From Hormiphora californensis (Eukaryota > Animalia > Ctenophora), in NCBI GenBank assembly GCA_020137815.1, contig CM035351.1:2914001-2978000 (forward strand): DNA of 64,000 bases, read 5' to 3'. Made by a program: the position numbers and the translations under genes. The notes beneath the pieces were generated by a model. That model was not told the DNA's origin. It worked only from the letters and a program-made list of their open reading frames with translations, and did no database searches. Below, piece after piece: positions 10,299 through 30,779 of the stretch (position 1 is its first letter; the number at the start of each line of letters is the position of its first letter).

Positions 10299-11331
10299 AT
10301 GGCTAGTGTTTGTGAAACTGCTAGTTTAGTAAAACTCGAAGAAAATACTGACAAGGAGAAAGAGTTGCAGACTGCTGCTTCTGTTGAGTGCAAAGATTCC
10401 GATGTTCAGGGCAAATCCATTGAAATTGTGAAATGTACTAAAATCAATGAGCTAATGATTGATGAGAATAGGATACCAGAAGAATGTAAAGTGTCCAAAA
10501 TATCAGATCTCGATCACAGTGTTGGTGATGAACCTCAGGCCGCTGAAAATACGAATGTAAAAGAAAAGGAAGAAGGAAATGTACCTACTACGGCTGAAAC
10601 CCCTGCAAAAGAAGATAATCCGGAAAAAGTACCATCATCATCTAAGCCGACATCAGATAAACCAACGTCTTCAGATCCTCCTCCTAAGGAAGCCCCTAAA
10701 CCAGCACGCCCTGACAAGTTACCTGATCTCCCCGCCGATTTGACGCCTCTGTTTAATCGGTGTACAACAATGACATCACGAGTTCTTGGTTTACTGAAGG
10801 AGAAAGTTACTGAAGACCTTAAGAAGAACAAGGAATCCAATAACAAAGAGAGGATCCGAGACCTACGGTCCTTGCTGTGGAAGGTGTGTGATTGTGAGCA
10901 GATGGGTGCCGAGAAGGTTAAACAACTGGAGGGGAAATCATCGTACGAGCTCCAGCAGATGCGAGAACAGAAGAAGTATGGGAACAGGAGCAAGGGGAAG
11001 AAGAACAGCAAGTGGAAGAAAAAGAGGGGATTCGACATTCGTGATGCACGTCAGTTTGCACGTGGGTTGGTGTTTGGGATAATAGACAAGGCTGTACGGC
11101 AGTTCATGTACTGAGGAGGAAGAGAAAAAGGCACGGTTAGAACAAGTGAAGGGATTTGTTGATGATATTATCACCCACTCTCTCAGTAAGCTGATCCTTG
11201 AGAGACAGCACAATCTGTCCAGTGTGGAGGCTGATCTGCTTCTAGCTATGCAGGAGGATGAGGAGGAGGAGGATGTTGTGAAAACTACACTTCTAAACGA
11301 TTCTATCAAAATCGAGCCTCGAGATAACTGA
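10299..11331 (+). CDS. Intronless acidic/low-complexity protein of unknown function; one +1 frameshift near 11083-11111
   Basis: 271-aa ORF ends QFMY*; the +1 frame continues as TEEEEKKARLEQVKGFVDDII...PRDN*; acceptor-like ctag|g immediately before ATG. Confidence 0.7.
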
Positions 11332-11477
11332 ACTTTTTAATAGAACTACATAATTTATTATCAAATTGAATCTTTTTAATTCACCTACAATTTATTTCTA
11401 TGTTTTAATTAAGTACCGAGTTTGAATTTGTGTTTCCTTCTGATTAGTCTCTCTCTTCCATAAACTATCTGTTCAGG

Positions 11478-14400
11478 ATGACCGACACTAAGGGTGAGAA
11501 AGTGAAGGAGATTAAGGAATGGCTTGCAACTCACAACCTTGAAGAAGAGCAGTTTGAAATAACAGACTTTACTGTTGACTATCTCTACAACTTGTGCCAG
11601 GTAAGTTTGTAAATGAATCTTTAATATAACTGGACAGTGGACATGAAAGATCCACCAATTGTGAGGTAGAAAAGTATGATAATTTACCGTTCTGTAATTT
11701 ATTAGGTCAACAGACAAAAGGATGCTCACTCTGGAATAAAATTAAAAGTTGACGAAGCTAGAGCAAAGCAGTTCAAGTCGGAAACCGAAGAAATTAACCA
11801 ACGCTTAGATTTTATAGGTACAATGTTTTAATTAGTGACGATATTTTCACTATAATGCTGATAAATAACTATGTCATGGTTTTATATGAACTGGCGGTTC
11901 AAGGTCCGAGTATAGTATAGCTTCGTCATGGTCTTCATACGGAAATAATTGTCCACTATAACGTTTTTCATTTCTTTTGTTTCCTTACTCAGACCCATTC
12001 AAACAGGGCTAAAGGAAGATCAGTTGCAATCCCGTGAACAGTTGAAAGAGTTGGCAGAGGCTGGTAACACCCTTCAGCTTTCTAATCCTCGTCTGGAAAA
12101 CTACCTGGTATGAATTTCACTTTATCAAACTCTGTTTCGCTAGTAAAAAATAGTTTGATACTGAGGAGAGCTGAGTTATGAGTATTTAATATTTATGGAT
12201 GTGTTACCACAATCTGAAATATCTCCCAGGTGTGTCTGTCTGACCGGTGTGAGGAGCATGATAGGGTTGAAGAGAAAGTAAAGGAGTTGGAGAGTACACT
12301 ACAAGATATTACTACCAAGCTGGAGCATATTACTACCATCACGACCACTCTCCAGCAGGAGCTGGGCAACAAGGGCAAATCAGAGTAAGATCCCCACCTA
12401 CCCGATTTGGTTATAAGTTATGACATTACCTAGTAAATGGGTGACTTTGTAACTACCTACCCGATATTATTGGACACAATTGGTCTGTTCTTTTCGCATG
12501 AACTAGTTAATAGTTTTGCTATTTGTTTAGGGAGACGGACTTGTTGGTCGAGATAGAGACAGCCAAAGCCCAAGCTCAACATTTCGCTGATTCAACTAAA
12601 GAGTACAAGAAACAACTCAGCATGAGTGGGGTGAAAAAGGTAACATTTGTAGGAGTTATAACTTATATCTTGTTATATGAGGGGCATGGGGAGAGTTGGA
12701 CCGAGCAAAGAGTCTATATTTTCAGTATTTTCAGTAGTTTCAAACTTTTCAACACTACTTTAAACAAATTAATTTGAGGATCCGTTTTGCTGCCCCTCGC
12801 TAATCCTTCTGAGACTTCTGTTTATCCCTCTCCTTAAAGAAAAGACAAGAGAAGACGTGTCTGGTTTTTCTAAGTAAACAGATCTCAGAGGACCTCGTTG
12901 GGTTATAACCAAGGACGCCAAGACTTGCAAGGAACGGTTCCTCGCGCCTCTATTTACAGGACAGGATGTCGGGTGTGGCTACCCATGATGTTATAATGTG
13001 CAGGAACGATATGGAGGGTAAGTTGCTCGCCACGAGCTACTCTGATAGATGTAAGGGTGCCAGTATTTTGCAGAGCATTAAGGATGATGCAGTGGAGCCT
13101 CCAAGTGGAGCCTCCAAAGCGGTTTTATGGACGATGGTCAAGGAACTATATGGATTGTTACCAGAAACACGACGCATCTCTACCCACTCATCTGAATCTG
13201 TGACATCATTCACAGCTGAAGACTTGAGAGATACACTGGATAAGCTGAAAGAGGATCTTCTGAGCACACTACCGGATCTGGTTGCCCCCAAGGTTAGCAA
13301 GATCTTAGCTCCTGGCAGTGACCAATTGGCAATTCATGCTGTGAATCGCACTGGCTCAGCACAGGAAACTGTGACCCCTGTGACTCCAATTAAGAGGTAT
13401 CTGACTATCAAGGATAAAGGTGAGGAAGGACCTATGTGTGAGAAGAAGTGGACTACTGTCGTGAAGACAAAGGTGGAGAAAGCATTGAATAAGATTCCAG
13501 TCCTAGATCTTTCAGTCACCAAGAGGAGGACAAATCTTATGTTTGAGACCGATGAACAGTTGGAACAGGCGAAAGAAGTTCTTTCACCATTCCTTGATGT
13601 TTCTCCCGTAGTGGAGAAGGAGAAGAAAAGAGATCCTCGCATCATGATCAATGATCTTGACCAAGACCTGCTGGAAAAAGATCGCCTTCTGTCAGAGATT
13701 GTCAGTGATAAGAATGAGTCTGTGAAGAGACTAGTTGAGGAGGGTCACCTGGTGAAGGTGGTCCATGTAAACAAAACAGGAAGATATGCAGTGTTCCAGG
13801 TCTCTCCAGAAGTGAGGAAGGCGATATCAGAAAGGAAGGACAAGCTATTCTTGAAACTTCGACAGCATTCAGTGAGGAACAGGTTTTATGTCACGCAGTG
13901 TTTTCACTGCCAGCGCTTTGGCCATGTAGCAGGATCCATCTACTGCCCAAACAAGGATAAATCTCCGGTTTGTGCCTTCTGTACGGGAGATCATGACACT
14001 AGGAGTTGCCATGCCAAGAAGGAAAATGTAGTGAGCAGGATGAAATGTGTCAACTGTGATCATGGAGGAAGCAGAGAGGACAAGCGCCATGCTCAAAGTC
14101 ACCCAGCCTCCAGCAGTATGTGTCCATTCTATGTAAATGCTAAAGGAAGACTCATGGAGAGTACCAGTGGAGTAACGAAGCAGGAAAAAAACGTGTACCT
14201 GACGAGGGCATGGGAGGATCTGAGAGGAAAACGTCTTGGAGGATTGGCACACTAAACGTCCACTCAGTTATGAATAAGACGTCAGGTGTAATTACACACC
14301 TGGAGGAAAAAGGATGCGACATCTGCTTGGTACAGGAGACTTATCTGAAACAGAGTGACACAGCTAAACTTCAGGAGATCAGAGACTATGGTTGGAATAT

Positions 14401-17400
14401 CTTCTCCTCGCCTAGAGCGGAACGTTCAGGAGGTGGGATTGGAATCTTGTACAGGGATGGTGTCAAGTTGAAATACACTCCGGTAAAAGCCAAGTTTAAA
14501 TCGTTTCAAGTCCAGGAAGCCCTTATTGGAGGAGGAAAAGACGTGACGAGGCTGTGCAATATCTATAGACCGCCGTATACTGGCAAGGCACGGTTTACGG
14601 AAGCCCAGTTCTTGGATGAGTTTACTGATTATTTGTCAGAGTTGGTCTGCAAAACGGGGAACCCTATCCTGATGGGGGACTTTAACTTCCAGGTTCAAGA
14701 TACTCAGAACTTCTATGCGAAGAAGTTACTTGGACTGCTTGACTCTCTTGGATTTGATCAGCGGGTCCCACTACAACCTACTCATGTTCGTGGTGGTACT
14801 TTGGATCTGCTTCTCTGCCAAAAAGACAGATATTCTAAGGTTCAATCAGTTGAAGTATTTCCTGAAGGAACGACCTCTGATCATTTTCTTATATTGGCGG
14901 AGCTGTGTATTGAAACTGTAGCAAGTGAATACAAGACTCGTGAAAAAGTGGACATGTACAGAGATTTCAAGGCTGTTGATATTGAAATACTTCGATGTGC
15001 TTTTAGGAGTGTGGATTGGAGTGAAGCGATGGAATCTGGATCAGCTGAGGAGGTTTTGTGTATTTATATGAGGAAACTTGAGGAACTTGTGGATAGGACT
15101 GTCCCGTTGAAGAGGAGAAAGAAGAGAGGAGCTAAGCTGAGGCCATGGAGAGATAATCCAGAGGTGCGTCAAGTTCTTCGTCAGCGGCGGAATGCTGAGC
15201 GAGCCTGGGAGAACAATAAAACCAGCGTCACGAAGAAGCAGTTCAATGAACTCAAGAGGCAGTTTGGGCGTGTTGACAAGGAAGCGAGGATGAACTACGT
15301 CAAGGAAGACTTGGAGGAGTCCAGAGATGACCCCAAAGCACTTCAAAGGAAATTGAACCGTCTACTTGGTAATACTGAGACCTTTATGCCTGAAACCACA
15401 GATAAGCGGAGGTTAGCGGATGACTTTGCGGACTTCTTTGTTGGAAAAGTTGATAAGATCCGGTCTACTGTTATTGGAGAGAAGAATCTGAGGACTAAGA
15501 GGAACCCTATTCATCAGACACCCGTCTGTTGTTTTGAGGAATTTGAGGAAGTTTCCCCAGAGAAACTAAAGAGGATAATCAAAGACATGCCAGACAAGAC
15601 ATGTGATCTTGACCCTATACCGACTTGGTTAGTGAAGGGGTGTATGCATGAGCTAGCTCCGGTCTTGTGCAGGTTTATTAACCTATCTCTTGGATGTTCC
15701 AGTGTTCCTGAACTTCTCCAGCAAGCTTTGGTGTTTCCAACGATTAAGAACCCTTATGGCGATAAGGACACTTTGACCAATTATCGGCCAGTCTCCAACC
15801 TATCTTTTTTCTCCAAGCTTCTTGAAAAGATAGTTCTAGAGCAGCTCAACTCGTATCTTAATGAGAACGAGTTACTAAATAAGCATCAATCAGGTTACAG
15901 GGTGAATCATAGCTGTGAAACCCTACTGATGGGTATGTTTGATGATCTCCTTCGGGATATGGATGAAGGAAAGGTCGCAGGCCTCTTTCTATTAGATATG
16001 AGCGCCGCTTTTGACACAGTGGACCATGGAAAGCTGCTAGAAGTTCTTGAAGAACGGTTTGGAGTGAGGGGTTCTGTCTTGGATTGGTTCGCCAACTATC
16101 TACAAATGAGGACTTATCGGGTAAACGTGGAAGGGGAACTTTCGAGGATTGTCTCTCTGATTTGTGGAGTTCCGCAAGGTTCACTGCTTGGACCTGTGTT
16201 GTTTTTACTGTATGTGGAGGAATTGCAAGATTTGGTCAAACCGTATGGCTTAAGGATTAAACTTTATGCGGATGACTCGCAATTGTACATCAGCTTTGTT
16301 CCAACTGATGAGGAAAACTGGAAACTGGCAAAGGAGAGGACTGAGGAATGCTTGACAAGTGTGAAAGAGTGGATGAGTGAGCACTGGCTAAAGTGCAATG
16401 AGGCAAAGACTGAATTCCTGCTGTTAGGCAAAAACAGCGCCCTGGATAAGATGGTCTATCAGCCCACTGTGGACTTTGGTGGAGTGGAGATAAGCCCAGT
16501 GGACTTTACGGGGAGTACAGGGAAAACACTAGGAGTGTTCCTTGATGGCAACCTCTCTATGGAGAGGCAAATCAACAGTGTTAAGAGGCAATGTGGTTTG
16601 TTGTTGAAGAATCTATGGCAGGTAAACCGGTGTCTAGATAGATCGACGAAGATACTCCTTGTTAAGCAGCTCATCATTTCAAGACTGGATTATTGTAATA
16701 TCCTTTACCATGGCGTACCTAAGAAGCTTCTCAACAGCCTTCAGAGAGTCTTGAACTCGTGTGTCAGATTTGTTTATGGCCTACACGGTCACCAAGACAC
16801 CTACATGCCATACTTGAAAGAATTGCATGTTCTTCCTGTGGAACAACGAGTCACGTTCAAAGCATGCCTTATGGCGTACAAGATTGTACATGGATTGGCC
16901 CCTGACTACCTGCAAGATCAGGTCCCTGTTGATGATGGACTTCATGTGATCCGGGCTACTAGAGGAAATGCTTGGCCTGATGGCCTCAAGCTGAAGTACC
17001 CTAAGCTATCAAGTGTCAACGCGACTTCCAAGTTGAGAAGAAGACGTCCGTCGGTTTACCTGCCTGAAGTCTGGAATAGGCTTCCACTTGATCTGAGAGC
17101 TGTTGAGTCTGTGGAATCTTTCAAGTCTAAGCTCAAGACTAGTCTTTTCACTGATGCTTTTGGTGAGACTGGACTGTCCTCTTAACACTCTCCTTCTTGC
17201 TGAGGTATGTGCTCTAGCTGGTACCCGTTTTTAATTATTTTTCTGTATTTAAGCTCGTGGCGAGCAGAAGTGTGAAGCATAGATTGGGGTTTTTCATAGC
17301 ACGAGTGTTTTTCTGTGTTCCAATATACGGACTTTTATATCAATTTTTAGAGTTCCAGGACTCTAACTCAGTCTGTTATGTAATCAGTCACCGATAGTTA

Positions 17401-17862
17401 TGTGAGCCGATAGTAATGTGAGCCGGTGTAATTTTTCTTTATTATTTTTTGTTCTATTAGGGATAAGTTGGCGAGGTTTTACCAGTATATTAACCGTTCA
17501 GATCATCCTTCAGTGACAGCAGCAGTTTCGCTGCTCTGTCCCTGTCGGATATGGGCGGAATATAAACTTAGTTATTATTATTATTATTATTATTATTATG
17601 TTCTTCTGTGAATCCCGGAAGGTTCTATATTAGTCTCCATGAGTTAATCTCCTCTCCCCTTCTCCAGGAGTACACCCACGAGCACCTTGAGAAGATGGCA
17701 GGACGTGTGACGTCACTAAAAACTCAGATAGAGGAAAGTAAGGAGAGGATCAGTCAGTTCAAATCTGTACCTCCCAGCATCCCTCTTGCAAAGGAGAAAA
17801 TCCGGGAGGTCCAGACAGAGATCATTGCAATTGAGCAGGAGTTCCCTGAGCTTTGTTTGTGA
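11478..17862 (+). CDS. HAUS1: HAUS augmin-like complex subunit 1; 6 exons (~11478-11601, 11706-11817, 12007-12106, 12229-12384, 12531-12639, 17668-17862)
   Basis: Phase-compatible GT-AG splicing gives IKEWLATH..QFEITDFTVDYLYNL, coiled coils, then HEHLEKMAGRVTSLK..FKSVPPSIPLAKEKIREVQTEI, matching recalled HAUS1 motifs. Confidence 0.8.
12966..14255 (+). CDS. LINE ORF1, gag-like with three CCHC zinc knuckles
   Basis: CFHCQRFGH..C, CAFCTGDH....C, CVNC...H.....C. Confidence 0.9.
   Translation: MSGVATHDVIMCRNDMEGKLLATSYSDRCKGASILQSIKDDAVEPPSGASKAVLWTMVKELYGLLPETRRISTHSSESVTSFTAEDLRDTLDKLKEDLLSTLPDLVAPKVSKILAPGSDQLAIHAVNRTGSAQETVTPVTPIKRYLTIKDKGEEGPMCEKKWTTVVKTKVEKALNKIPVLDLSVTKRRTNLMFETDEQLEQAKEVLSPFLDVSPVVEKEKKRDPRIMINDLDQDLLEKDRLLSEIVSDKNESVKRLVEEGHLVKVVHVNKTGRYAVFQVSPEVRKAISERKDKLFLKLRQHSVRNRFYVTQCFHCQRFGHVAGSIYCPNKDKSPVCAFCTGDHDTRSCHAKKENVVSRMKCVNCDHGGSREDKRHAQSHPASSSMCPFYVNAKGRLMESTSGVTKQEKNVYLTRAWEDLRGKRLGGLAH
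14210..17185 (+). CDS. LINE ORF2: APE endonuclease plus reverse transcriptase
   Basis: LVQET, MGDFN, TLDL, SDH (APE); YRPVSNL, LLDMSAAFDTVDH, GVPQGSLLGP, YADD (RT); SRLDYCN C-terminal motif. Confidence 0.95.
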   Translation: MGGSERKTSWRIGTLNVHSVMNKTSGVITHLEEKGCDICLVQETYLKQSDTAKLQEIRDYGWNIFSSPRAERSGGGIGILYRDGVKLKYTPVKAKFKSFQVQEALIGGGKDVTRLCNIYRPPYTGKARFTEAQFLDEFTDYLSELVCKTGNPILMGDFNFQVQDTQNFYAKKLLGLLDSLGFDQRVPLQPTHVRGGTLDLLLCQKDRYSKVQSVEVFPEGTTSDHFLILAELCIETVASEYKTREKVDMYRDFKAVDIEILRCAFRSVDWSEAMESGSAEEVLCIYMRKLEELVDRTVPLKRRKKRGAKLRPWRDNPEVRQVLRQRRNAERAWENNKTSVTKKQFNELKRQFGRVDKEARMNYVKEDLEESRDDPKALQRKLNRLLGNTETFMPETTDKRRLADDFADFFVGKVDKIRSTVIGEKNLRTKRNPIHQTPVCCFEEFEEVSPEKLKRIIKDMPDKTCDLDPIPTWLVKGCMHELAPVLCRFINLSLGCSSVPELLQQALVFPTIKNPYGDKDTLTNYRPVSNLSFFSKLLEKIVLEQLNSYLNENELLNKHQSGYRVNHSCETLLMGMFDDLLRDMDEGKVAGLFLLDMSAAFDTVDHGKLLEVLEERFGVRGSVLDWFANYLQMRTYRVNVEGELSRIVSLICGVPQGSLLGPVLFLLYVEELQDLVKPYGLRIKLYADDSQLYISFVPTDEENWKLAKERTEECLTSVKEWMSEHWLKCNEAKTEFLLLGKNSALDKMVYQPTVDFGGVEISPVDFTGSTGKTLGVFLDGNLSMERQINSVKRQCGLLLKNLWQVNRCLDRSTKILLVKQLIISRLDYCNILYHGVPKKLLNSLQRVLNSCVRFVYGLHGHQDTYMPYLKELHVLPVEQRVTFKACLMAYKIVHGLAPDYLQDQVPVDDGLHVIRATRGNAWPDGLKLKYPKLSSVNATSKLRRRRPSVYLPEVWNRLPLDLRAVESVESFKSKLKTSLFTDAFGETGLSS

Positions 17863-18051
17863 GGGAATTAGGACACTTTGTACATAGCATGACATTATTT
17901 GTATCTCCAGCTTTTTAGTAATTAATCTTATATTTCACATGACAGATCCGTATTAATTGTCTATAATGCTACTGACTACTGCATAGTGACTACAGACTAG
18001 TGACTAGTGACTGCTGTGTATTTTATAACTGTACCACCACTGTACCAGGCT

Positions 18052-19285
18052 ATGATAACACTACAGAAGCTGCTGGGTGGCATAGCTGCTCAGGTCCGTG
18101 TTAGTGGAAGTGCAGTACAAGTCCTTGATTCACCCTCTCAATTTGCTGATACACTCCTAGAACTCAGCGCTTCCGCCTCCCAACGTGCCCGCATTTCATC
18201 TCTTTACTTTGGATCGGGTGAGACTGAGCAGCGAATAGCGGGTAATCTGACCAGTTCTGTAACGACTCGAGGATGTGATGTGAGTGTCCTATTGGATCAC
18301 TGCCGGGGTCTCAGGAACGGTGCCCCATGCCTTATCCAGCCTCAGAATGGTAGCCCCAATTCACATGTTCAGGCCGCCACATGGGTTCAAGATCCACAAC
18401 TACCGGGTTCCATCCTTGTTGGGTGAGCTACTCCGGGTTCACCATATGAAGTATTACCTGTTCGATGACACTGTCATATTGTCTGGAGCGAACCTGTCCG
18501 ATCTGTATTTCGGACCCCGGCAAGATCGATACATAACGGTCCAATCTCGGGAGTTGTGCGACTATCTGTGTGAGGTTCACCGTCAGTTTTGTCTTTATGC
18601 ACCGGTGTGGAGTAGTAATTCCCTGTCCTGGAGCTGGAAGAAGGAGCTCGTGAAGGAGGCTGCACAAACAACCAGGACTGTTACAAGTTGTAACTTCCAA
18701 AAGAGTAAACTTCAGATGGCCAAGGGTGACACTTCAGTTTTTCCAATGTTCCAGATACCCTTTTATAATATCCGACAAATTGACGAGGCCTTGGAGTTGA
18801 TCTGCCTGAGAACAGGCGGAAAGGATATGACATTAGCATCGGGTTACTTTAACCCCTCCTCTCGGTTATCAAACAAACTTGGTGGGACAGAGGCTACTGT
18901 TGTCGTTCCTTCAAGTTCTGCTAATGGGTTCCATGGGGGACGTGGAGTGAAGGGTTTTGTCCCTGATTGGTATAATTCTATTGCGGTTAAATTTGACCAG
19001 TCCAGTCCTAAAGCTACGGTTCTCCAGTATGAGAGAGATGGATGGTCTTTTCATGGGAAGGGTCTATGGCACAATGATGTTAATATTTTGGGTTCCTCTA
19101 ACTTCAACAGGCGTGCTACTGCCAGGGACAATGAATTGTCATTTGCTCTGATAACAGAAAACGAAAACTTGAAGACCGCCCTCGAAAATGAGAGGGACAG
19201 ATTGTTGTTTTATTCAACTCCGTTGATAAGAGAATATCGAACTGTTGTGAAACTAGGGTTACCTTTGATGTCTTCGATTTTGTAA
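18052..19285 (+). CDS. PGS1: Mitochondrial phosphatidylglycerophosphate synthase (PLD superfamily), intronless; one +1 frameshift at ~18316-18326
   Basis: ISSLYFGSG..LLDHCRGLR in one frame; HMKYYLFDDTVILSGANLSDLYF..RQDRY, ASGYFN, ANGFHG, WSFHGKGLW, GSSNFNRR..RDNE in the +1 frame. Confidence 0.9.
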
Positions 19286-19342
19286 TATTGTTTGCTAGTT
19301 TTCTCCGTTTTTTTACATAAGACTCTCATTCTTGAACTTTGA

Positions 19343-21304
<1,962 letters not shown>

Positions 21305-21479
21305 GATACAGATAGAGAGGGAAATAGGACTTCCTTTATTTTAATTTGAAAAGCGAACTTTTTATTTTTAAATGTCATAGCTTTCTGCTTCTATTTTAGA
21401 ACGAACTGCGTTTATTCTACAGAGTGTGAAAATGAGTAAAAATACAATTCTCCCTCCCCTCTTTAGAATGTAACTTGTA

Positions 21480-22833
21480 ATGATTCGTCAATGTGTCCGA
21501 CCCCTCCGATGTTTCACTACCCTGACCGAGGCTCGGGCAGTAGCGGATGCTCTCCCACTACCCGATCACTTGGCACTTCTCAGTGCCATCCCCGAGAGGG
21601 TGCTGGAGGGGGTACCGGCTGATAAACACAGTTCGGCACTACAGATTCTATCCATGCAGAGGCCTGACGCCTGGAAGCAGCTCAAGGGTCTCTTTAGTGA
21701 ACAGCTGTTGTTGGATCCTGCAAATTCTTCTCTCTATCTCACTGCAGTGGTCTCCAAACTCCGTACCAAGTGAGTAGTGTGGGAGGGGGAGGGGGTCTAA
21801 TATATAAATTTCGACTCAAAATTGCGATTTCAATGCATGTGATTTGAGGCCGTTTGAGGGACTTCCATAACTGTTAACTCTCCGCCCTTTTCCAGGGGTG
21901 TTAGTTTCAAGAAAAAGCCATTGAACGCAAAGAAGCATGCGAGCTATCTTGATGGAAATAAGAGGATGTTATCAGAACTCCCGGTGACATCCACCCTGGA
22001 TAAAATTACAACTGCACTCTACTGGCTCGATCATGGACATACTGATTATCTGACCAGGTTAGGAATTGAATCCAGCTAGTCCCCCCTTTTTTGGATCATG
22101 GTGAACTCACTGCGTGTAGGACCTATTCACCCTTCCGAATAAAAACCTCATGAACACCCGTAATTATTTTTCCAGGTGTCTTAGTGGTGTTCAGCTTAAG
22201 GAGGTGCTTGACTGTTTCCAACTTATCCGGCCCATCCTAGTTGATCCCTCGGCCCCCATTGGGGTCATGGAGCTAGTTATCAGGCATGTCATGACGTGTG
22301 GAGATCTGGCTAAACTCGCTGCTCTCTCTACTCTTTACCCTGGGACCAACTTAGCAGGTACTTGAGAGGTATTTTGAATAGTTTTGCTGTTTGTTAGCAC
22401 TTTCTCTGGAAAATAATGTCTAGTAAACACCTCTCGTATTTAGTCGATTGACCAATTTCTTCTGCAAACCTCGATTTACCGGATTCCCCAGGGAAGGGTT
22501 TTCCACGGTATTATGTATTGAGGTGTATGGTGTAATTTAAAAAATAAATCCTCATTGGGGGAAATTTTACCGTCCTGTAAATTAGACAAAAAACCATGTG
22601 TTTTTAATGGTTAATTACAGCTTAAACAGACACAAAAGGAACACTGGACAATACTAACTGAAGTCATGGATCTATTGGGTACTTTTTTTCAGTGTGAGTT
22701 CATTCCTCTGCCACATGATGGAAGACATTATGGTGTTCGGCTTCGGGTCACCTCTTATCAGTTTAAACAGCTCTGGAGTAGTCAAGATACCTAAACAGCC
22801 TCTTACCTCAGTAAAAGCTTGATTGGATTCTAG
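21480..22833 (+). CDS. Unknown protein with mitochondrial-presequence-like N-terminus; 3 clear exons (21480-21769, 21897-22057, 22176-22357), last exon frame ambiguous
   Basis: MIRQCVRPLRCFTT start; phase-compatible GT-AG junctions for exons 1-3; exon 4 (~22621-22833) reads long only if +1 shifts are allowed. Confidence 0.55.
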
Positions 22834-22968
22834 ATGAATTTAGAAAATAGAATCTAATCCAACTTTCCTGTAAATTCGAGTCCTTTCAAGTTTCATGCAC
22901 CTGATCTCTTCATTGTCTTACATAGTAATACACGCTGAAACACGCTGCATGTACTAGTTCATCCGGCC

Positions 22969-25308
22969 CTAGTTATCAGTTCCGAATCTCGTGGCAAACT
23001 TCCTCCATGCCTTCCACAGGATGCCTGCTAAATTCCTATAGATAGAACTGTAAAAGATGGGATTCAGGAGGCTGTTGCTAGGCAATACCACTAAGGTGAA
23101 TACCTCTTGAATGATTTCTGATGGCGCTGCCGGGTTAATCCAACTGAAGTAGAAGATAGTGAAAATATAGGAAAGCCACGCAACCACCTGACTACCAATC
23201 AGCAGGGACATCTTCAGAGCGAGCTTCTTCACATTATTAACTGAGTTTGGTTGTGCCCCAGCCTCCGTACTGGTCCTGTGGCTGGTTACCAGGATAGATA
23301 TGTAGGACACGGATAGCGTGATCATCAGCATGGTCACCAACCCGCAGTATCCGATCTTGTAGGGCATGTAGGAGAGTTGGTTTTTGAACACATTCGCCTC
23401 GCACAGAGGACTGTTTCCATAGTAACCAATGGGTAGGTAATCAAATATGGTCGGGTCTGATGTGATGTTCCGGAGATCCTCGAGAACGGCTTCCATGCCC
23501 CTATCTCCAGGTGTGCTGTTGTAAACCAGGGTGTGCATTTTGGAGATGTGGGAGCCATCGGGGCGCTGTATAAATGGATTTAACCTTGGTTCTGTGAGAA
23601 CCATATTGGTCCGAAAGAACTCCTGTATTCTCCAGTAGGGAATAACTGGAATTAGTGCATGGACCACGTTGAATATGCCAATGGCTCCTGTTGTAACCCA
23701 TGCTCCTCTCACAGAGAACGAGTCGACGTGATCGAGGAAAATGAGAAACCTTACCATACTCATTGCAGTGATGGTCATAAATGAGCCATGGGCGGAGATC
23801 GAGAAAACGCAGCCAAGCCCAGCGCATAAGAAGCTAGATCTCCACTTTGCATCAACTTTGCAGTAGTCGTCAATAGTGTAAAGGACAACTGCAACCACGA
23901 CCAACATGATAAGGTAGACCCCCATAAGGAGATCATATCCAGCCACCTGCATCCGGAATATCCTATCTACCTTACCCTTCTCACTTTCCGGCGTTTCCCA
24001 GTACGTCTCGAAGCCTATGAAGAGGTTCAACGTTACAACAGCCAAGCCTACCACTAGAGTCGATCCGAGGAGGGCATTACTCCCAATCATTAATTTGCTG
24101 CTACTCAATGTACCGATCTTACATCCCTCACACTCATCGCGGCCATTGGCACAGTCCCTCACTCCATTGCACACCTCGCTCTGTGCTACCCACGAGATAT
24201 CTCCATCTTCTTTGGAACAGTAAAACCGGTTCGGACAATACAGCTCGTCTAAACTGTTATCACACTCAGTGGTCCCATCGCACAGCTTATCCAGGGTGAC
24301 GTCAGCTTGCTTCAAATTATCTGTCGCGGGCGGACAGTTGAAAAATATTGTGGTAGGAATTATTGTATGATCAGGAGAAAGCTCCTGAACTGCAACAAAA
24401 ACCCGATTGCACAGGTCTGTGACCCATTTTGAAATGTTAACCCAATAGTACTCCTCCTCTAATATGTGTTGGCATTCAATTTTCTCGAAAATATCTCGGA
24501 GTGGGTGGCCCGAATAATCCAAAAGCACATTTATGATTCTTCTCTCGGAATTTACCAGAACTCTACCTACTGTAGCATTCTGGCCTACGGTGAGTGATGA
24601 ATTGCAGTTGATCACGTCATCAAAACCCCGACAATTTAGATACTGTAGAGAATCTTTAATTGAGCAAGCGTGTTCCTCAGAGAGACAAGTGTGGTATGAA
24701 CCATCATTCAAACATGTCAATTCCACGACATTTTTGCTACACAGACACTCATCGAGACTATGAAGACATTGGCCGACCCCATCGCACACCTGTGAAAAGG
24801 GGATACACCCAGGACCTCTCGGACAAAAGAACCTCGATTCACCATTCTCACAACCACACTCGTCTGTGGAACAAAAGCTCGTTCCTGAGCACTCAAGTGT
24901 CCCCATGGTTGCTTTGGAATGCAATGTAACTATATTACATGTCATGCTGATGTTTCCAAAAGACAACTCCTTAAGAAATTCCATCTTTTCGTCGACCTTG
25001 CGAGGACCTTGACCAATGAGGAACCTGTTTCCGTCCATGTTGGTGGCCAACCATATAGCATCTGGAAAAAATGGGCATTTCGTTTCGTAAAATTCCGGTG
25101 TTCTGAACAGTAGCTGGACATTCTTGGTGGCGTTAACAAATCTCCAATGTGTGGTTTTAGAATACCATAGCTGCCACTTTAGAGCTTCTAAACACCGACT
25201 ACCCTCGGTATTTTCGTAAGAGAAATACCTTTCTCGATAATCTATCACCATCAAGTTGCTGGTCACTGCTCCAGCAATGAGAAATGCCATGATACAGACA
25301 TCGGCCAT
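22969..25308 (-). CDS. Intronless LDLa-repeat class A GPCR (GRL101/RXFP-like 7TM domain, no evident LRRs)
   Basis: Signal peptide; several CDG...C....DE LDLa motifs; DLLMGVYL, WRSSFLC..LG, PSNSLLNPIFYS; seven hydrophobic segments. Confidence 0.88.
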   Translation of the reverse strand: MADVCIMAFLIAGAVTSNLMVIDYRERYFSYENTEGSRCLEALKWQLWYSKTTHWRFVNATKNVQLLFRTPEFYETKCPFFPDAIWLATNMDGNRFLIGQGPRKVDEKMEFLKELSFGNISMTCNIVTLHSKATMGTLECSGTSFCSTDECGCENGESRFFCPRGPGCIPFSQVCDGVGQCLHSLDECLCSKNVVELTCLNDGSYHTCLSEEHACSIKDSLQYLNCRGFDDVINCNSSLTVGQNATVGRVLVNSERRIINVLLDYSGHPLRDIFEKIECQHILEEEYYWVNISKWVTDLCNRVFVAVQELSPDHTIIPTTIFFNCPPATDNLKQADVTLDKLCDGTTECDNSLDELYCPNRFYCSKEDGDISWVAQSEVCNGVRDCANGRDECEGCKIGTLSSSKLMIGSNALLGSTLVVGLAVVTLNLFIGFETYWETPESEKGKVDRIFRMQVAGYDLLMGVYLIMLVVVAVVLYTIDDYCKVDAKWRSSFLCAGLGCVFSISAHGSFMTITAMSMVRFLIFLDHVDSFSVRGAWVTTGAIGIFNVVHALIPVIPYWRIQEFFRTNMVLTEPRLNPFIQRPDGSHISKMHTLVYNSTPGDRGMEAVLEDLRNITSDPTIFDYLPIGYYGNSPLCEANVFKNQLSYMPYKIGYCGLVTMLMITLSVSYISILVTSHRTSTEAGAQPNSVNNVKKLALKMSLLIGSQVVAWLSYIFTIFYFSWINPAAPSEIIQEVFTLVVLPSNSLLNPIFYSSIYRNLAGILWKAWRKFATRFGTDN

Positions 25309-25447
25309 AGTTACAACCTTTATAGCCGCGTAAAGAGTGGTATCAAAATCATCATCAATGCGCTGGCAAGCGCAAAGGTGACCCCATCCATTCCCCGAAA
25401 AAATTCCCTCAAGAAACGGCCTGCTTGCTCACATCGCGTATTATATA

Positions 25448-26053
25448 CAGTCAGACCCCGATTTAGTGGCCCCCGATTTAGTGGCACCCCGATTTAGTGG
25501 CAGGATTTTTTTCCCCCAAAAGTTTTTTGTGAAGTTTTTTTGAAAATTTTTCAAAGGAATACCAGCCACGTCCGAATCGTGTTTCGAATCAGTGAATCTT
25601 ATCGCATGTCCTGCTGCTAATTAGACGGTTCGGAACGAACCGATACGTGATCCCCATGGGGCCATTGAATCATAAGTTCACCAAGCGTCAAAATTTCGAT
25701 TCGATGGGATCACGTTTCAATTCGTTCCGAACCGTCTAATTAGCAGCAGGACATGCGATAAGATGTACCGATTCGAAACACGATTCGGACATGGCTGGTA
25801 TAACTTAGAAAAATTTTCACAATTTTTTTGAAAAAGTTATTTTATAGTTTTCTATTTCTAATCAGAAATGATCATGTCATCAATACATGAATATTGCATA
25901 TAACAGTTAGAGGTGTCTTTAGTCTTAGTACAGCATTTTGGGCATAAAATAGGTTTTTATGGGCCAAATATGGCTCACCCCGATTTAGTGACACGCCGAT
26001 TTAGTGGCAGGATTTCTTTCCCCCGAGGATGCCACTAAATCGGGGTCCGACTG
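25448..26053. mobile_element. Tc1/pogo-type MITE with TA TSD and an internal inverted repeat
   Basis: TA|CAGTCAGACCCCGATTTAGTGGC ... GCCACTAAATCGGGGTCCGACTG|TA; inner arms ~25560-25655 / ~25703-25800; related stub at ~28465-28510. Confidence 0.88.
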
Positions 26054-26720
26054 TAATTATAATATTACCTTACTCTCGTTTTTTAAGAAACGCTTTAGTA
26101 AGAAACTTTTTTATAGGAAACTTTTCAAATGTAAATCACACAATTCAGAGACACCACAACAAAATAGAACACCCCTAACTTGTTTAGTTTCTTGATAAAG
26201 GATAATTTCTATTCGTTTTTGGATTGCTTACACCTGTAGTTTCCTAGAAAAAAGTTTCTTGTTTAAAAGTTTCTTGAAATATGCGAGCTTAATTAACGAG
26301 AGTAAGGTATATAAAATTAATTGAAATTAATGGGCCGGAAAGGTTGCCCTATTATTTGAGCTATCTTTGACACCTTAACATTCACGGGCTACAGACAGGG
26401 TACAGTCTATGCTTCGTCTATATGTACAAGGTAATGTACTGGTTCCAAAGGTAGCTCAAATGATCACATACTATTGCAGCTGTTGCTACCATTTATAAGG
26501 CGATTATAACTAGCGTGGGGAGCTTTAATAGTAACTTAAGTCACACCTTTATAAACAATGGAGCAAAGAAAGTACATAATCGATGCGCATATTATATCAC
26601 GCTAATACAATGCCTCGAGATATAATATATAATATATATTTTCTTTTATAAAGAAAGAAACGATAATCTGATCGTGTCGTTTTTTAACGACTATCGTGGT
26701 CAACATAAATTCAGAATTCT

Positions 26721-26812
26721 GAATAATGAGATCTGAGCAAGTATTAAATAGGGAAGAAAATCGAAAAATACTGGGCTTGGCCGGGAAATGAACCAGGGAC
26801 CTTCAGAGAGAC
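26721..26812 (-). repeat. Diverged, 5'-truncated dispersed copy of the tRNA-like unit arrayed at 32-33.5 kb
   Basis: gagatctgagcaagtattaaatagggaagaaaatcgaaaaatactgggcttggccgggaaatgaaccagggacc aligns to the array unit. Confidence 0.85.
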
Positions 26813-27378
26813 ATGTATAGCTATGAGCAATATAATATGTGTGAAAGGATTGCAGTCGCCATTTCGTCATTTCTCAACCGATATTATAGAGTCTCCAAAG
26901 TGGTTTGTCGAAATTGGAGCTCAAAAGTTAACCAAATTATTTTGAGAACGGGAGGTTCAATCTCAAAATCCTTTTGGAAGTTTTCGATATCTATATACAT
27001 AATCATTTAATCAATCTCCCTGGGTTTTGCAAATTACAAGCTGCAATAATACTTATCATTATACAGCTCGTAATAACTGCATAATATTATATGTAGTATG
27101 ACAATATGTAGTATGACAATATATACAACATATAATATATATGTAGTGCCATTTGGACTCCTCTGATTATATAAAATCAACAAAAATAAGATTTAATACG
27201 GATAATTGTTATATAATGGGGATATAATGCATGCTATGGGGCTTGATTTACCTACGTCTCATTATTGTTCAACATTTTACAACTCAGGGGGGGATTGACA
27301 ATATGTTTCGCGAGGACAAGTGCAACTAAGTGAGCGTGACCACACAGAACTATTATAGTTGCTTGCGGAGGCCCGTAC

Positions 27379-30072
27379 ACATGGTTACCACTTCGTGTCA
27401 TACTTCCCGGAAGTCTTATTGCACTCTGATCGTTTCTCGTTTCCTGTTGCCCTCGTTCTCTCAGTACAAACACCACATTTTGTCACCTGTTTCTTTCTTT
27501 CACGTTCAACAATCACTCACAGCCCTCCTCCTACTCCCCAGTGGTCTCTACGCAGCTTAGATAATGCCCAATGTGTCTCTAATAAGCTTAGAAATGGCCC
27601 ATTTTCACTGAAAAAGTACCCGAAAATCCCACCCGCCCACCCCCAGCCACCCTCCCTTTAATCTTTATCTCTACTGAAAATGGACACACCTCTCACCTCA
27701 TCACCAACAACATCACGGTACCAATCAGAAATCAAATACTGTAAGTTCATCTGTCCGTATTGTCTGTTCATCTATTGTGTACTGTTGATAATGATACTGG
27801 AGTAAACCTTACCAATCAATAATTTAATTAGAGCTACTATAGACAGACTACCCCAGACCCAAGCTTGAGAAGTGTCCACTCGACGGACCCGGGACCGTCG
27901 TCGTAACAAACAAACGAACAGGCCTTCCTGCACAGCCACCCAAGCTTGAAACTTTGCCCCCTAACTTGTCATGTTGCTTATTCGCAAGATAACTGCAATG
28001 CCCTCACGGGGCGGAGATGCGAAGAGTGCAACCGACCTTTAACCGTGGGGGCTGCATAAGTGTCTGGCAAGTACAATGACTGACTGACATTAAGAATGCC
28101 ATGATATTAACTGACCACAACACGATGACAGGCGCTATGACGAGGTTGCAATGTCGTTCTGCCCTACGGGGCAGAGTTTGGCACGCTATAACCTATCTGT
28201 GCCACCACCACCTCTCGTATTTAACTTGGTCCTTGGATCACACAATCACTGCGCTGGCAAGCGCAAAGGTTTCCATCCCCCTCTCATTACCTCCTCATCT
28301 CAGTGGTTGGGAAACTGTTACAAGACTCGGATCCCGGGAGCAGGTTGGATATCTTCACCCAATACCTTGTTCACCTGTCTAACCAGCGAGACAGTGTGGC
28401 GATATACAAGATACTGATGGAACTCAAGGTATAGACATACTTCCATATAGGGTGCTAGTATAACAATCGGATCCCGCTTTACCGGGATGCTCGGAAATCG
28501 GGGTCCGACTTCTTCTTCTTCTTCTTCTTGGAGGCCGTCTCCATTGGTTGGGGTGCGACTGTTATACTACAGTACAGGTTACCATCCTTGTCATATCTTA
28601 CAGGCAGGAAAACAGAGGTGTCCCCTATTTTGAATTCAGGATAAGTGACTCCGTGTCAACTCTAAATGTTTCAGATGCCTGAGGACGTGCTGCGTCAGAC
28701 ATGTCTGGAATTCCTACACAATAACCAAGATGATCTCCTTCTCACCACCCTCCTAGCATGCCAAGGATCCTTCCTAGATGTAGCAGGCATCCTGACCCCT
28801 CCCAATCTCTCCACACCCCAGGACCAGGTGCTGGGACTAGCTACAAGATACCTAACCTCACCTCTCTTACCATACTTCCTGCACAAGGTATCCCGTCCTG
28901 GGTTCCTGCCCAATAACCCCAATATGACTTGGTATGTGCTGCAGCTGCTAGATCGAGCTTCCAGAGAGGGTGAGAGTATAATGTCTTCTAGAGATGGTGA
29001 GAGTGTAATGGCTTCTGGAGATGGTGAGGGTTTCATGTGTCCTCTAGTGTCCCTGCTGACCCCTCACCAGCGAGGGGACCTTATAATGAGGTGCATGGAG
29101 GAAGGGTCCAACACTGACCTCATCCTTCCTATAATGAAGGTTAGCTGGGGAGATGAGAGTGCATTAGCCACTCTAGCACACGTCCTCCATTCTCTCCAAA
29201 ACACCCTATCTGCCAGCGATTATCTTGATGATATCTTTACCCTTACATTCCCCTCCCTACCCTCCCAAACTGTCCTGGATCTCACCAGGACACTCTTTGA
29301 TGGGGGTGTCATGTCGGAGTACGGGAAGAACCTCTGGACGATCTATGGGAATTCAGCCCGGGGTAACACTGACATGGCTAGAGGGTTGTTTGCGGAGTGT
29401 TACCATGACAACACGGTATACTTCTCCTCTGGAGACCTCCAGAATCTCCAGACACTTTGCCCTGAGTTGGATGGTGATATTAGTGACAAGATTGAAGTGC
29501 TGGCCAGGTACAATGAGGATCTGGATGACATCATAGAGTCACGTGACCTACCAAAACTTCTCAAATTCCCTGACTTCAGTTTATCACTTCTTCATGACAA
29601 TACATGGCTACTTAAAATTGTGGAACACTTCTCAGTTCACATTGCGTTCCATGTTGCCATAACAACAGCCGGTAGCAGCGCAGGGTTGTATGAGCTGTTG
29701 CGGCAGGTGGAGGGAACGAGTTACTACACCCGGGTTGTCCGGTCATTCTGGCCTATCCTACCAGGCAATCTCAAGTCTTACACCAGGAAACACCAAAATC
29801 AGAAAACTACAACTGCCCAAATGTACTTTTACAGCTACTGCAACAATTTTGGGTACAGCAATGCCCTGAGTGAGACATTGCTAGCTGGGGAAATGGGGAG
29901 ACGAGATGTTGTAGAGACGCATCTTACTTCGTTCTTATTGACACGGGATGGAGAAATTGGGACAGCTGCAAGACACATGGGAGGACTCGGGAAACTTGAT
30001 AAAGTGATGTTAAATTTGTTATTGGACACAGGGAAAGGGATTGAAGGAAAAGAGAATTTGTTAACAGTTTAA
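27379..30072 (+). CDS. Large unknown protein; 5' part (27379-28230) frame-disrupted, 3' exons intact (to 28428; 28675-30072); start uncertain
   Basis: Introns ~27741-27832 and 28429-28674; phase-0 join ..IYKILMELK|MPEDVLRQTCLEF..; 465-codon Leu-rich last exon. Confidence 0.6.
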
Positions 30073-30173
30073 TTTTTTTCAATTTTTTGCACATTTCTTA
30101 AACTCCATTCTTTTTTATAATCGACCGTTATTTAACTCATATAACCAATTACTTATCTCCTCCTAGCAGAGCC

Positions 30174-30779
30174 ATGTCCCATTCCTTCCTATCTGGATAC
30201 AGGATTATCCTAGCCAGTGGTTCTCCCAGAAGGAAGGAACTCATGAAACAAGTCGGTATCCCTGCCGAGGTTATCCCCTCAAAATTCGAGGAAAACCTCT
30301 CCAAATCAGGGGTGTCAGCGGGGGAGTACTACAATATCCACAGCCCGGGGTAAGGCGAGGGAGGTATGGGGTGAAAACCGGGAATGGTGTTATCATTGGT
30401 GCTGACACCGTGGTGGTCTCGGGTGACGGTGCAATTCTGGAGAAACCAAGGGACAAGGATCACGCGTTTGAGATGTTGAAAGGGTTGAGTGATGGAAGGA
30501 CCCACACCGTTGTAACAGGGGTGTGTTTATGTTACGGTGAGAGAGAGCGGACATTTCACACTGAAACTGAGGTCCTGTTGAGGAGGGTTAGTGATGATAT
30601 GATAAAGTGGTATGTGGCAACTGGGGAACCAATGGATAAAGCGGGTGGGTATGGGATACAGTCCCTAGGGGCAGGTGTTAGTGGAGAAGGTGAACGGTTG
30701 CTATAGTAACGTTGTTGGGTTACCAGTTAGCCAGTTGTTGGTAGAGTTACAGGAACTTCTCACAGAGAAAACTGAATGA
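30174..30779 (+). CDS. Maf-family nucleoside triphosphate pyrophosphatase (ASMTL N-domain/YhdE-like), intronless; three +1 frameshifts (~30330-30339, ~30368-30385, ~30674-30680)
   Basis: [21 protein letters not shown] / TARGKAREV / [25 protein letters not shown] / [15 protein letters not shown] in four successive frames. Confidence 0.92.

What the first reader, a model, noticed from the sequence alone, without database searches (positions are those of the whole stretch)
10299..30779. Unidirectional +1 frameshifts concentrated in intronless housekeeping genes: candidate nuclear recoding or single-nucleotide-deletion system
Seen: 8 clear breaks (10.3 kb gene x1, PGS1 x1, TGS1 x3, Maf x3). Every one is repaired by removing exactly one base. 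In these four genes there are no -1 events and no nonsense substitutions, and catalytic motifs are conserved on both sides of each break in PGS1, TGS1 and Maf. By my manual splicing, seven multi-exon neighbours (HAUS1, CFAP410, MALSU1, PELO, KH, RBM42, SGF29), the LINE ORFs, the GPCR and the TRP gene have no breaks. Known: pseudogene decay gives mixed indels and stops. Pervasive +1 frameshifting is established in Euplotes nuclear genes and some animal mitochondria, but I know of none in animal nuclear genomes. Inference: (a) tolerated genomic insertions bypassed by +1 ribosomal frameshifting, (b) single-nucleotide deletion editing, or (c) insertion-biased long-read error. Option (c) is the main null because each site can be placed in a run of 2 or more identical bases. 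However, nearby repeats and the LINE look clean, which uniform error would not predict. I see no shared slippery motif, and stop codons lie at variable distances, unlike Euplotes AAA-TAR.
Basis: partly seen in the sequence, partly recalled or inferred. Interest (0 to 1): 0.9.

Follow-up and report, generated by a model that had tools for sequence, protein, structure and literature searches.

The report
Assembly insertion errors mimicking +1 frameshifts
The eight one-base frame breaks are truly present in this assembly, but at the four sites that could be checked the extra base is missing from transcripts and from other animals' DNA, so they are assembly errors and not a new recoding system.

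Summary
PGS1 has one break, TGS1 three, Maf three and the gene at 10.3 kb one. Each is mended by dropping exactly one base, and no break goes the other way.

The interpretation as recoding or editing does not hold. Public contigs were laid on 17600-23500. Two genomic runs from an independent 2025 sample lack one base at 18328, 20968, 21141 and 21280, in all or nearly all of the depth. A 2019 run that is evidently RNA lacks 18328 and 20968. Its TGS1 contig is three bases shorter than the assembly overall.

For Maf and the 10.3-kb gene no reads could be laid. Intact orthologues from a sister species run straight across those breaks.

The same defect occurs elsewhere in the genome: seven times in the single-copy CCT-delta gene, and also in CCT-epsilon, IleRS and mtHSP70. 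All 18 single-base events are +1.

In 15 of the 17 events that could be placed, the extra base follows a codon's third base, differs from it, and would be a synonymous alternative (P = 7e-5). This looks like a heterozygous SNP with both alleles written in tandem. The genome matches a published wtdbg2/Arrow/Pilon assembly of one individual with 2% SNP heterozygosity.

The scan's other "+1 frameshift" notes on this genome probably have the same cause.

The parts
10299..11328 (+). Single-exon gene of unknown function (K/E-rich). Frame 0 runs to about 11108, then frame 1. The surplus base is at 11109 (ATG[T]ACT).
   Evidence: The 384-aa intact orthologue P0241 aligns from end to end with a single +1 step. 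No reads were laid here.
18052..19285 (+). PGS1 (PLD-type phosphatidylglycerophosphate synthase), single exon. The surplus base is T at 18328 (CCA[T]GCC).
   Evidence: Pfam PLDc/PLDc_2 is split over two frames. One base is left out at 18328 in X1, X5 and X6 at full depth. The gene is single copy.
19366..21398 (+). TGS1 mRNA, from the spliced-leader acceptor to the poly(A) site. The CDS is 19376-21304. Surplus bases are at 20968 (GT[C]GGAG), 21141 (AGG[A]CAG) and 21280 (TAC[T]TTT).
   Evidence: Methyltransf_15 profile positions 3-47, 43-101 and 112-162 lie in three frames. Bases are left out at 20968, 21141 and 21280 in X5 and X6, and at 20968 in X1. X1 also shows the leader and poly(A) as loose ends. 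Alignment with P0122 and P0125 gives three +1 steps. The gene is single copy.
30174..30779 (+). Maf-type nucleotide pyrophosphatase, single exon, read in frames 0, 1, 2 and 0. Surplus bases are at 30330, 30385 and 30674.
   Evidence: Pfam Maf is split over frames. The intact 200-aa orthologue P0001 aligns from end to end with three +1 steps and 186 identical residues. The gene is single copy. No reads were laid here.
12966..17185 (+). LINE with intact ORF1 (429 aa) and ORF2 (991 aa). This is context only and has no breaks.
   Evidence: A young element present on only one haplotype would carry no heterozygous SNPs; that is inference.

Best explanation
The eight surplus bases are errors of the genome assembly. 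They are not features of the animal's DNA, and nothing is recoded.

The most likely way they arose is as follows. The assembly is a collapsed consensus of noisy long reads from one very heterozygous individual. At some heterozygous SNPs the consensus kept both alleles one after the other, for example CCA/CCT written as CCAT. Short-read polishing then failed to remove the extra base in these heterozygous stretches.

This model accounts for the pattern. Such doublets can only add a base, so every break is +1. Exonic SNPs are mostly synonymous third-position changes, so the extra base sits right after a codon's third base. SNP-dense haplotype blocks are local, so the breaks are clustered.

Shown: the extra bases are absent from RNA and from independent DNA at the laid sites, and the same defect occurs genome-wide. 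Inferred: the doublet mechanism, and the identity of the assembly.
For: 1. One search, table 4. One base is left out at 18328 and 20968 in all three DNA/RNA-type runs at full depth. One base is left out at 21141 and 21280 in X5 (426/426 and 426/452.7) and X6 (527/527 at both).
2. X5 and X6 are genomic and independent. They come from a 2025 sample and are 0-3% diverged from the assembly. Their contigs run unspliced through the introns 21770-21895 and 22054-22171 and across the PGS1-TGS1 spacer.
3. X1 is RNA. It has a poly(A) tail after 21398 and GT..AG joints. It carries the leader ACTTTAAACAAATTAATTTG before 19365 and 21465. Its TGS1 contig has exactly three one-base gaps over 20592-21398.
4. 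Intact orthologues cross all Maf breaks and the 11.1-kb break.
5. The defect is genome-wide. Single-copy CCT-delta has seven +1 steps and no -1. mtHSP70 has one, IleRS one, and the CCT-epsilon-like gene has one +1 plus one two-base surplus. In total, 18 of 18 single-base events are +1, with a two-sided P of 8e-6.
6. In 15 of 17 placeable events the extra base is a different, synonymous alternative to the preceding third codon base. Exhaustive random insertion into intact ORFs gives 0.41, so P = 7e-5.
7. A published assembly matches this genome: 110.6 Mb in 44 scaffolds and the same leader sequence. It was built with wtdbg2, Arrow and Pilon from one individual with 2% SNP heterozygosity and one variant per 63 bp (PMC8527503).
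8. Pilon is reported to fail on an indel in a heterozygous coding region (PMC8092372).
Against: - No reads of the assembled individual's own DNA were examined, so the absence of the bases from that individual is inferred.
- For 21141 and 21280 the RNA contig shows no gap at exactly those coordinates. Its two further gaps were among rows the tool did not print, so their place next to the sites (the other allele) is inferred.
- Two of the eight window events, ATG[T] and GAA[T], would be non-synonymous doublets.
- The doublet behaviour of this assembler's consensus rests on my reasoning, not on a cited test.
Confidence: 0.92

Rival explanations
1. It is an assembly artefact, but of the generic kind: residual random or homopolymer insertion errors of long-read consensus, unrelated to heterozygous SNPs.
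For: The bases are absent from independent reads. One of the four read-defined sites lies in a T run (21280). A few others can be placed in two-base runs. Insertion-rich raw reads are typical of the technology named in PMC8527503.
Against: Three of the four read-defined surplus bases lie between two different bases. In 15 of 17 events the base is a synonymous third-position alternative, against 0.41 expected for random insertions. The events cluster where the transcript contig also differs from the assembly by SNPs at 20926 and 21162.
Confidence: 0.13
2. The genome truly has the extra bases and ribosomes bypass them by programmed +1 frameshifting.
For: The direction is uniform and the domains are conserved on both sides.
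Against: A polyadenylated, leader-capped transcript contig lacks the base at 18328 and 20968 and is three bases shorter over the TGS1 breaks. Independent genomic DNA lacks all four. Orthologues have no shift. There is no shared shift motif. Seven such sites in 680 nt of CCT-delta would be absurd for translation.
Confidence: 0.01
3. The DNA carries the extra bases and they are removed from the RNA by single-nucleotide deletion editing.
For: The RNA contig X1, from the 2019 sample that may be the assembly's source, lacks bases that the assembly has.
Against: Genomic contigs of another sample of the same species lack the same four bases, so no editing is needed to explain the RNA. The bases are patterned like SNP alleles. 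No such editing is known in animals (my own knowledge).
Confidence: 0.01
4. These are decaying pseudogenes or real loss-of-function alleles carried by the sequenced animal.
For: There are several lesions per gene.
Against: The genes are single copy and essential: PGS1, TGS1 and CCT-delta. There are no stops from substitutions and no deletions. All 18 events go the same way. Protein identity to the sister species is about 93% for Maf. The transcript is expressed and lacks the surplus bases where this could be seen.
Confidence: 0.02

Closest known systems
Gene-fragmenting indel errors in long-read assemblies
   Same: Single-base indels in the consensus break ORFs of otherwise intact, essential genes and are absent from accurate reads. 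PMC12007338 describes such errors introducing frameshifts and premature stops. PMC8092372 shows Pilon failing to correct an indel in a heterozygous coding region.
   Different: Here the errors are all insertions and are mostly outside homopolymers. They are patterned like synonymous SNP alleles written in tandem and cluster in short stretches. The usual description is homopolymer-length error.
Pervasive +1 ribosomal frameshifting in Euplotes nuclear genes
   Same: Many genes need a +1 shift to be read through.
   Different: In Euplotes the shift is in the mRNA and occurs at a defined motif before a stop codon (my own knowledge). Here the base is missing from the RNA contig at 18328 and 20968 and from independent DNA at all four laid sites. 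No motif is shared, and orthologues have no shift.
Nucleotide insertion/deletion RNA editing (kinetoplastid or myxomycete mitochondria)
   Same: The gene sequence and the mRNA differ by single nucleotides that restore a frame.
   Different: Those systems act on organelle transcripts, and the DNA of every individual carries the unedited form (my own knowledge). Here the genes are nuclear and conspecific DNA already has the 'edited' form.

Membership tests
Programmed +1 ribosomal frameshifting | The surplus base is present in the mature mRNA. | tested here: not met
   X1 transcript contigs carry the leader and poly(A) and lack the base at 18328 and 20968. The TGS1 contig is a net three bases shorter across the three breaks.
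Programmed +1 ribosomal frameshifting | A shared shift-prone motif at the sites, conserved in orthologues. | tested here: not met
   The contexts differ: CCA T GCC, GTC G GAG, AGG A CAG, TAC T TTT, TAC T ACA, GAA T GGT, GCA G GTG and ATG T ACT. Orthologues P0001 and P0241 are unshifted.
Deletion-type RNA editing | Genomic DNA of the species carries the extra base while the RNA lacks it. | tested here: not met
   Genomic contigs X5 and X6 lack the base at all four laid sites. The DNA of the assembled individual itself was not examined.
Processed or decaying pseudogene | An intact functional copy elsewhere, with mixed lesions (both indel directions and stops). | tested here: not met
   There is one locus each for PGS1, TGS1 and Maf in G000. 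Only +1 events are seen and there are no substitution stops.
Assembly consensus error | The difference is absent from independent sequence data of the same species. | tested here: met
   table 4: 18328, 20968, 21141 and 21280 are left out in X5 and X6 in all or nearly all of the depth.
Assembly consensus error | The same defect recurs across the assembly, also in essential single-copy genes. | tested here: met
   CCT-delta has seven, the CCT-epsilon-like gene two, IleRS one and mtHSP70 one.
Assembly consensus error, heterozygous-SNP doublet subtype | The assembled individual is heterozygous for exactly the two bases of each doublet. | not testable with these tools
   The single read-laying run was already used and only contigs were served. 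Indirect support comes from the 15 of 17 synonymous third-position doublets, P = 7e-5, and from 2% SNP heterozygosity in the matching published assembly (PMC8527503).

The most novel reading that the evidence does not exclude
The four sites that no reads covered (Maf at 30330, 30385 and 30674, and the 10.3-kb gene at 11109) could be real genomic insertions that are read through by +1 frameshifting or removed from the RNA. In that case the four tested sites would be errors and these four would not.
Probability: 0.01. Interest if true: 0.9.

Novelty: not a real feature. Interest (0 to 1): 0.05.

Why it matters
The biology here is ordinary: PGS1, TGS1, Maf and their neighbour are normal genes, and TGS1 at least is seen expressed as a leader-capped, polyadenylated mRNA. 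The practical value is a warning. This assembly carries clustered, insertion-only, SNP-like surplus bases that break single-exon and long-exon genes. Any '+1 frameshift', 'skipped T at a stop' or 'one extra base' finding on this genome should be checked against reads before it is believed. Gene models and orthologue sets built from this assembly will also truncate such genes.

Tried and rejected
1. I looked for near-identical proteins of the same species in the large protein collection, to fetch independent contigs for Maf, the TGS1 C-terminus and the 10.3-kb gene. Only sister-species orthologues and distant homologues came back, so no second data source exists for the Maf and 11.1-kb sites.
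2. I tried a homology-free tally of overlapping ORF pairs over 264 kb. It gave 17-31 pairs at +1 and 10-22 at -1. Intron-split genes, antisense ORFs and LINE ORF1/ORF2 overlaps made it too noisy, so I dropped it in favour of Pfam-guided loci plus frameshift-aware alignment.
3. Tiny introns of length 3n+1 were rejected. The alignments are collinear residue by residue at the junctions, leaving no room for an intron.
4. Apparent -1 steps in CCT-delta each resolved into two +1 steps about 10-16 nt apart.
5. The myosin and other chaperonin loci that looked split turned out to be ordinary introns.
6. The metatranscriptome run X7 covers none of the break sites.
Full report
**What is in the sequence**

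The region holds four single-exon genes on the + strand whose conserved domains are spread over successive reading frames.
- Pfam places PLDc_2/PLDc in frames 1 and 2 of 18004-19282 (PGS1).
- Methyltransf_15 profile positions 3-47, 43-101 and 112-162 lie in frames 2, 0 and 1 of 19376-21297 (TGS1).
- Maf positions 1-37, 62-159 and 159-186 lie in frames 0, 2 and 0 of 30174-30776.

I wrote a protein-to-DNA aligner that charges the same penalty for skipping one base, skipping two bases, or reading a residue from two bases. With orthologues returned by the searches it finds only +1 steps:
- Maf against P0001: 30330, 30385 and 30674.
- The 10.3-kb gene against P0241: 11109.
- TGS1 against P0122 and P0125: 20969, 21141 and 21280.

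Eight of eight in one direction has a two-sided P of 0.008. PGS1, TGS1 and Maf each occur once in the 110.7-Mb assembly, so they are not retrocopies of intact parents.

**The decisive test**

The look-up of sequencing runs returned runs of the same coded organism from three studies. I laid X1, X5, X6 and X7 on 17600-23500, which was the one call allowed.

X5 and X6 come from a 2025 sample and another study, and they behave as genomic DNA.
- Their contigs run unspliced through two introns that X1 splices out (21770-21895 and 22054-22171).
- They cross the PGS1-TGS1 spacer.
- Their depth is even.
- They differ from the assembly by 0-3%.

X1 is labelled 'DNA?' but is evidently RNA.
- It has a poly(A) tail after 21398 and GT..AG joints.
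- It carries a 17-20-nt leader before 19365 and 21465.

Table 4 shows one base left out at each break:

| Site | X1 | X5 | X6 |
|---|---|---|---|
| 18328 | 9.46/9.46 | 799.7/799.7 | 473.5/473.5 |
| 20968 | 103.8/103.8 | 426/426 | 672.4/672.4 |
| 21141 | no gap at this coordinate | 426/426 | 527.4/527.4 |
| 21280 | no gap at this coordinate | 426/452.7 | 527.4/527.4 |

These are exactly the four breaks in the laid stretch. No other indel in the printed rows of that table is shared by the two DNA runs (18 further rows were not printed).

X1's TGS1 contig covers 20592-21398 in 804 letters for 807 positions. It has three gaps and two substitutions. Only the gap at 20968 was printed. The other two were among the 18 hidden rows and do not sit at exactly 21141 or 21280.

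The extra base is therefore absent from independent DNA at all four sites. It is absent from RNA at two sites for certain, and probably at all four.

**Sites without reads**

For Maf and the 10.3-kb gene, no same-species sequence could be found in the protein collection. The sister-species orthologues P0001 (200 aa) and P0241 (384 aa) are intact and align from end to end across the breaks. Maf has 186 identical residues. The 73 residues after the 11.1-kb break are 97% identical. These four sites are assigned to the same cause by analogy, not by direct test.

**The defect is genome-wide and one-directional**

I scanned the whole assembly with four Pfam families and looked for abutting matches in different frames. 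The loci were then cut out.
- CCT-delta on C5 is the only locus with about 67% identity to orthologue P0242. It aligns collinearly over 517 residues with seven +1 steps and no -1.
- mtHSP70 on C1 has one +1 step (AGG[A]CTG).
- IleRS on C2 has one (TTT[C]GAG, placed by eye).
- A CCT-epsilon-like gene on C3 has one +1 step and one surplus of two bases.

Together with the window this gives 18 single-base events, all +1, and no deletion. The two-sided P is 8e-6. mtHSP70 has introns, so the defect is not confined to intronless genes. Long exons are simply where it is easy to see.

Earlier notes of this scan report the same kind of thing on other pieces of the genome (s1-875012, s1-875249). I did not test those.

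**How the errors probably arose**

Reads and orthologues place the surplus base precisely:
- Window: CCA[T]GCC, GT[C]GGAG, AGG[A]CAG, TAC[T]TTT, TAC[T]ACA, GAA[T]GGT, GCA[G]GTG and ATG[T]ACT.
- CCT-delta: GTG[C], TTT[C], ACA[T], GAG[A], GAG[A], AAC[T] and CCC[T].

In 15 of the 17 placeable events, the base follows a codon's third position, differs from it, and would make a synonymous codon. Exhaustive insertion of every base at every position of five intact ORFs gives such a reading in 41% of cases, so P = 7e-5.

This is what one expects if a heterozygous SNP had both alleles written into the consensus. It explains four things:
- Only insertions occur.
- Homopolymers are not required.
- The breaks cluster. 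TGS1 has three in 315 nt and none in the 1.6 kb upstream, where X1 matches the assembly perfectly. In the broken stretch X1 also differs by SNPs at 20926 and 21162.
- A LINE present on only one haplotype would stay clean (inference).

X1 gaps one base aside from 21141 and 21280 are what the other allele would give.

**Literature**

The genome matches a published ctenophore assembly of 110.6 Mb in 44 scaffolds. Its spliced leader ends ...ACTTTAAACAAATTAATTTGAG, the same letters as X1's loose ends. That assembly was built with wtdbg2 from PacBio CLR reads of one animal and polished with Arrow and Pilon. It is described as a composite of both haplotypes, with 2% SNP heterozygosity and one variant per 63 bp (PMC8527503). 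The identification is my inference from size, leader and closest orthologues.

The Hapo-G paper reports that Pilon failed to restore an indel in a heterozygous coding region (PMC8092372). Long-read errors that pseudogenise genes are a recognised class (PMC12007338).

**Verdict**

The recoding and editing readings are refuted where they could be tested, and they are very unlikely elsewhere. This is an assembly artefact of a recognisable and somewhat unusual kind.

**Remaining gaps**

- The assembled individual's own DNA reads were not examined.
- The four unlaid sites were not tested directly.
- Two X1 gap positions were not printed.

Noticed in passing
window 19365-19366, 21398, 21465: Transcript contigs carry the spliced leader (...ACTTTAAACAAATTAATTTG) joined at 19366, the TGS1 start, and at 21466, the next gene. 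A poly(A) tail follows 21398. PGS1 stops 80 nt before the TGS1 acceptor, and only 67 nt separate the TGS1 poly(A) site from the next acceptor. This is an operon-like, trans-spliced gene cluster.
   Followed up: partly
G000:C5:2222701-2224800 (L026): The single-copy CCT-delta gene has a single exon and carries seven surplus bases within about 680 nt (L026 1052-1730). The first 890 nt of the gene are clean.
   Followed up: yes
G000:C3:9163401-9165500 (L025, minus strand): A CCT-epsilon-like gene has one +1 break and one place with two surplus bases (GCG[GA]GAA). This is the only event found that is not a single base.
   Followed up: partly
G000:C2:9622501-9624600 (L029); G000:C1:6402001-6406500 (L023): IleRS (TTT[C]GAG) and mitochondrial-type HSP70 (AGG[A]CTG) each carry one surplus base of the same kind. 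The HSP70 gene has introns.
   Followed up: partly
window 12966-17185: An apparently intact LINE. ORF1 (429 aa, with cysteine-histidine knuckles) overlaps ORF2 (991 aa, endonuclease and reverse transcriptase) by 46 nt in the -1 frame.
   Followed up: no
window 49552-51139 and 51359-52908 (minus strand): A tandem pair of two-exon genes for secreted-looking proteins with a PTVPETEP repeat tract of different length in each copy. Long antisense ORFs run through the repeat.
   Followed up: no
window 20061-20063 and 22646-22648: The independent sample carries an in-frame three-base deletion in the acidic region of TGS1 (X5, 645 of 821 depth). Both of its runs carry a 34-nt insertion relative to the assembly near 22647.
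   Followed up: no
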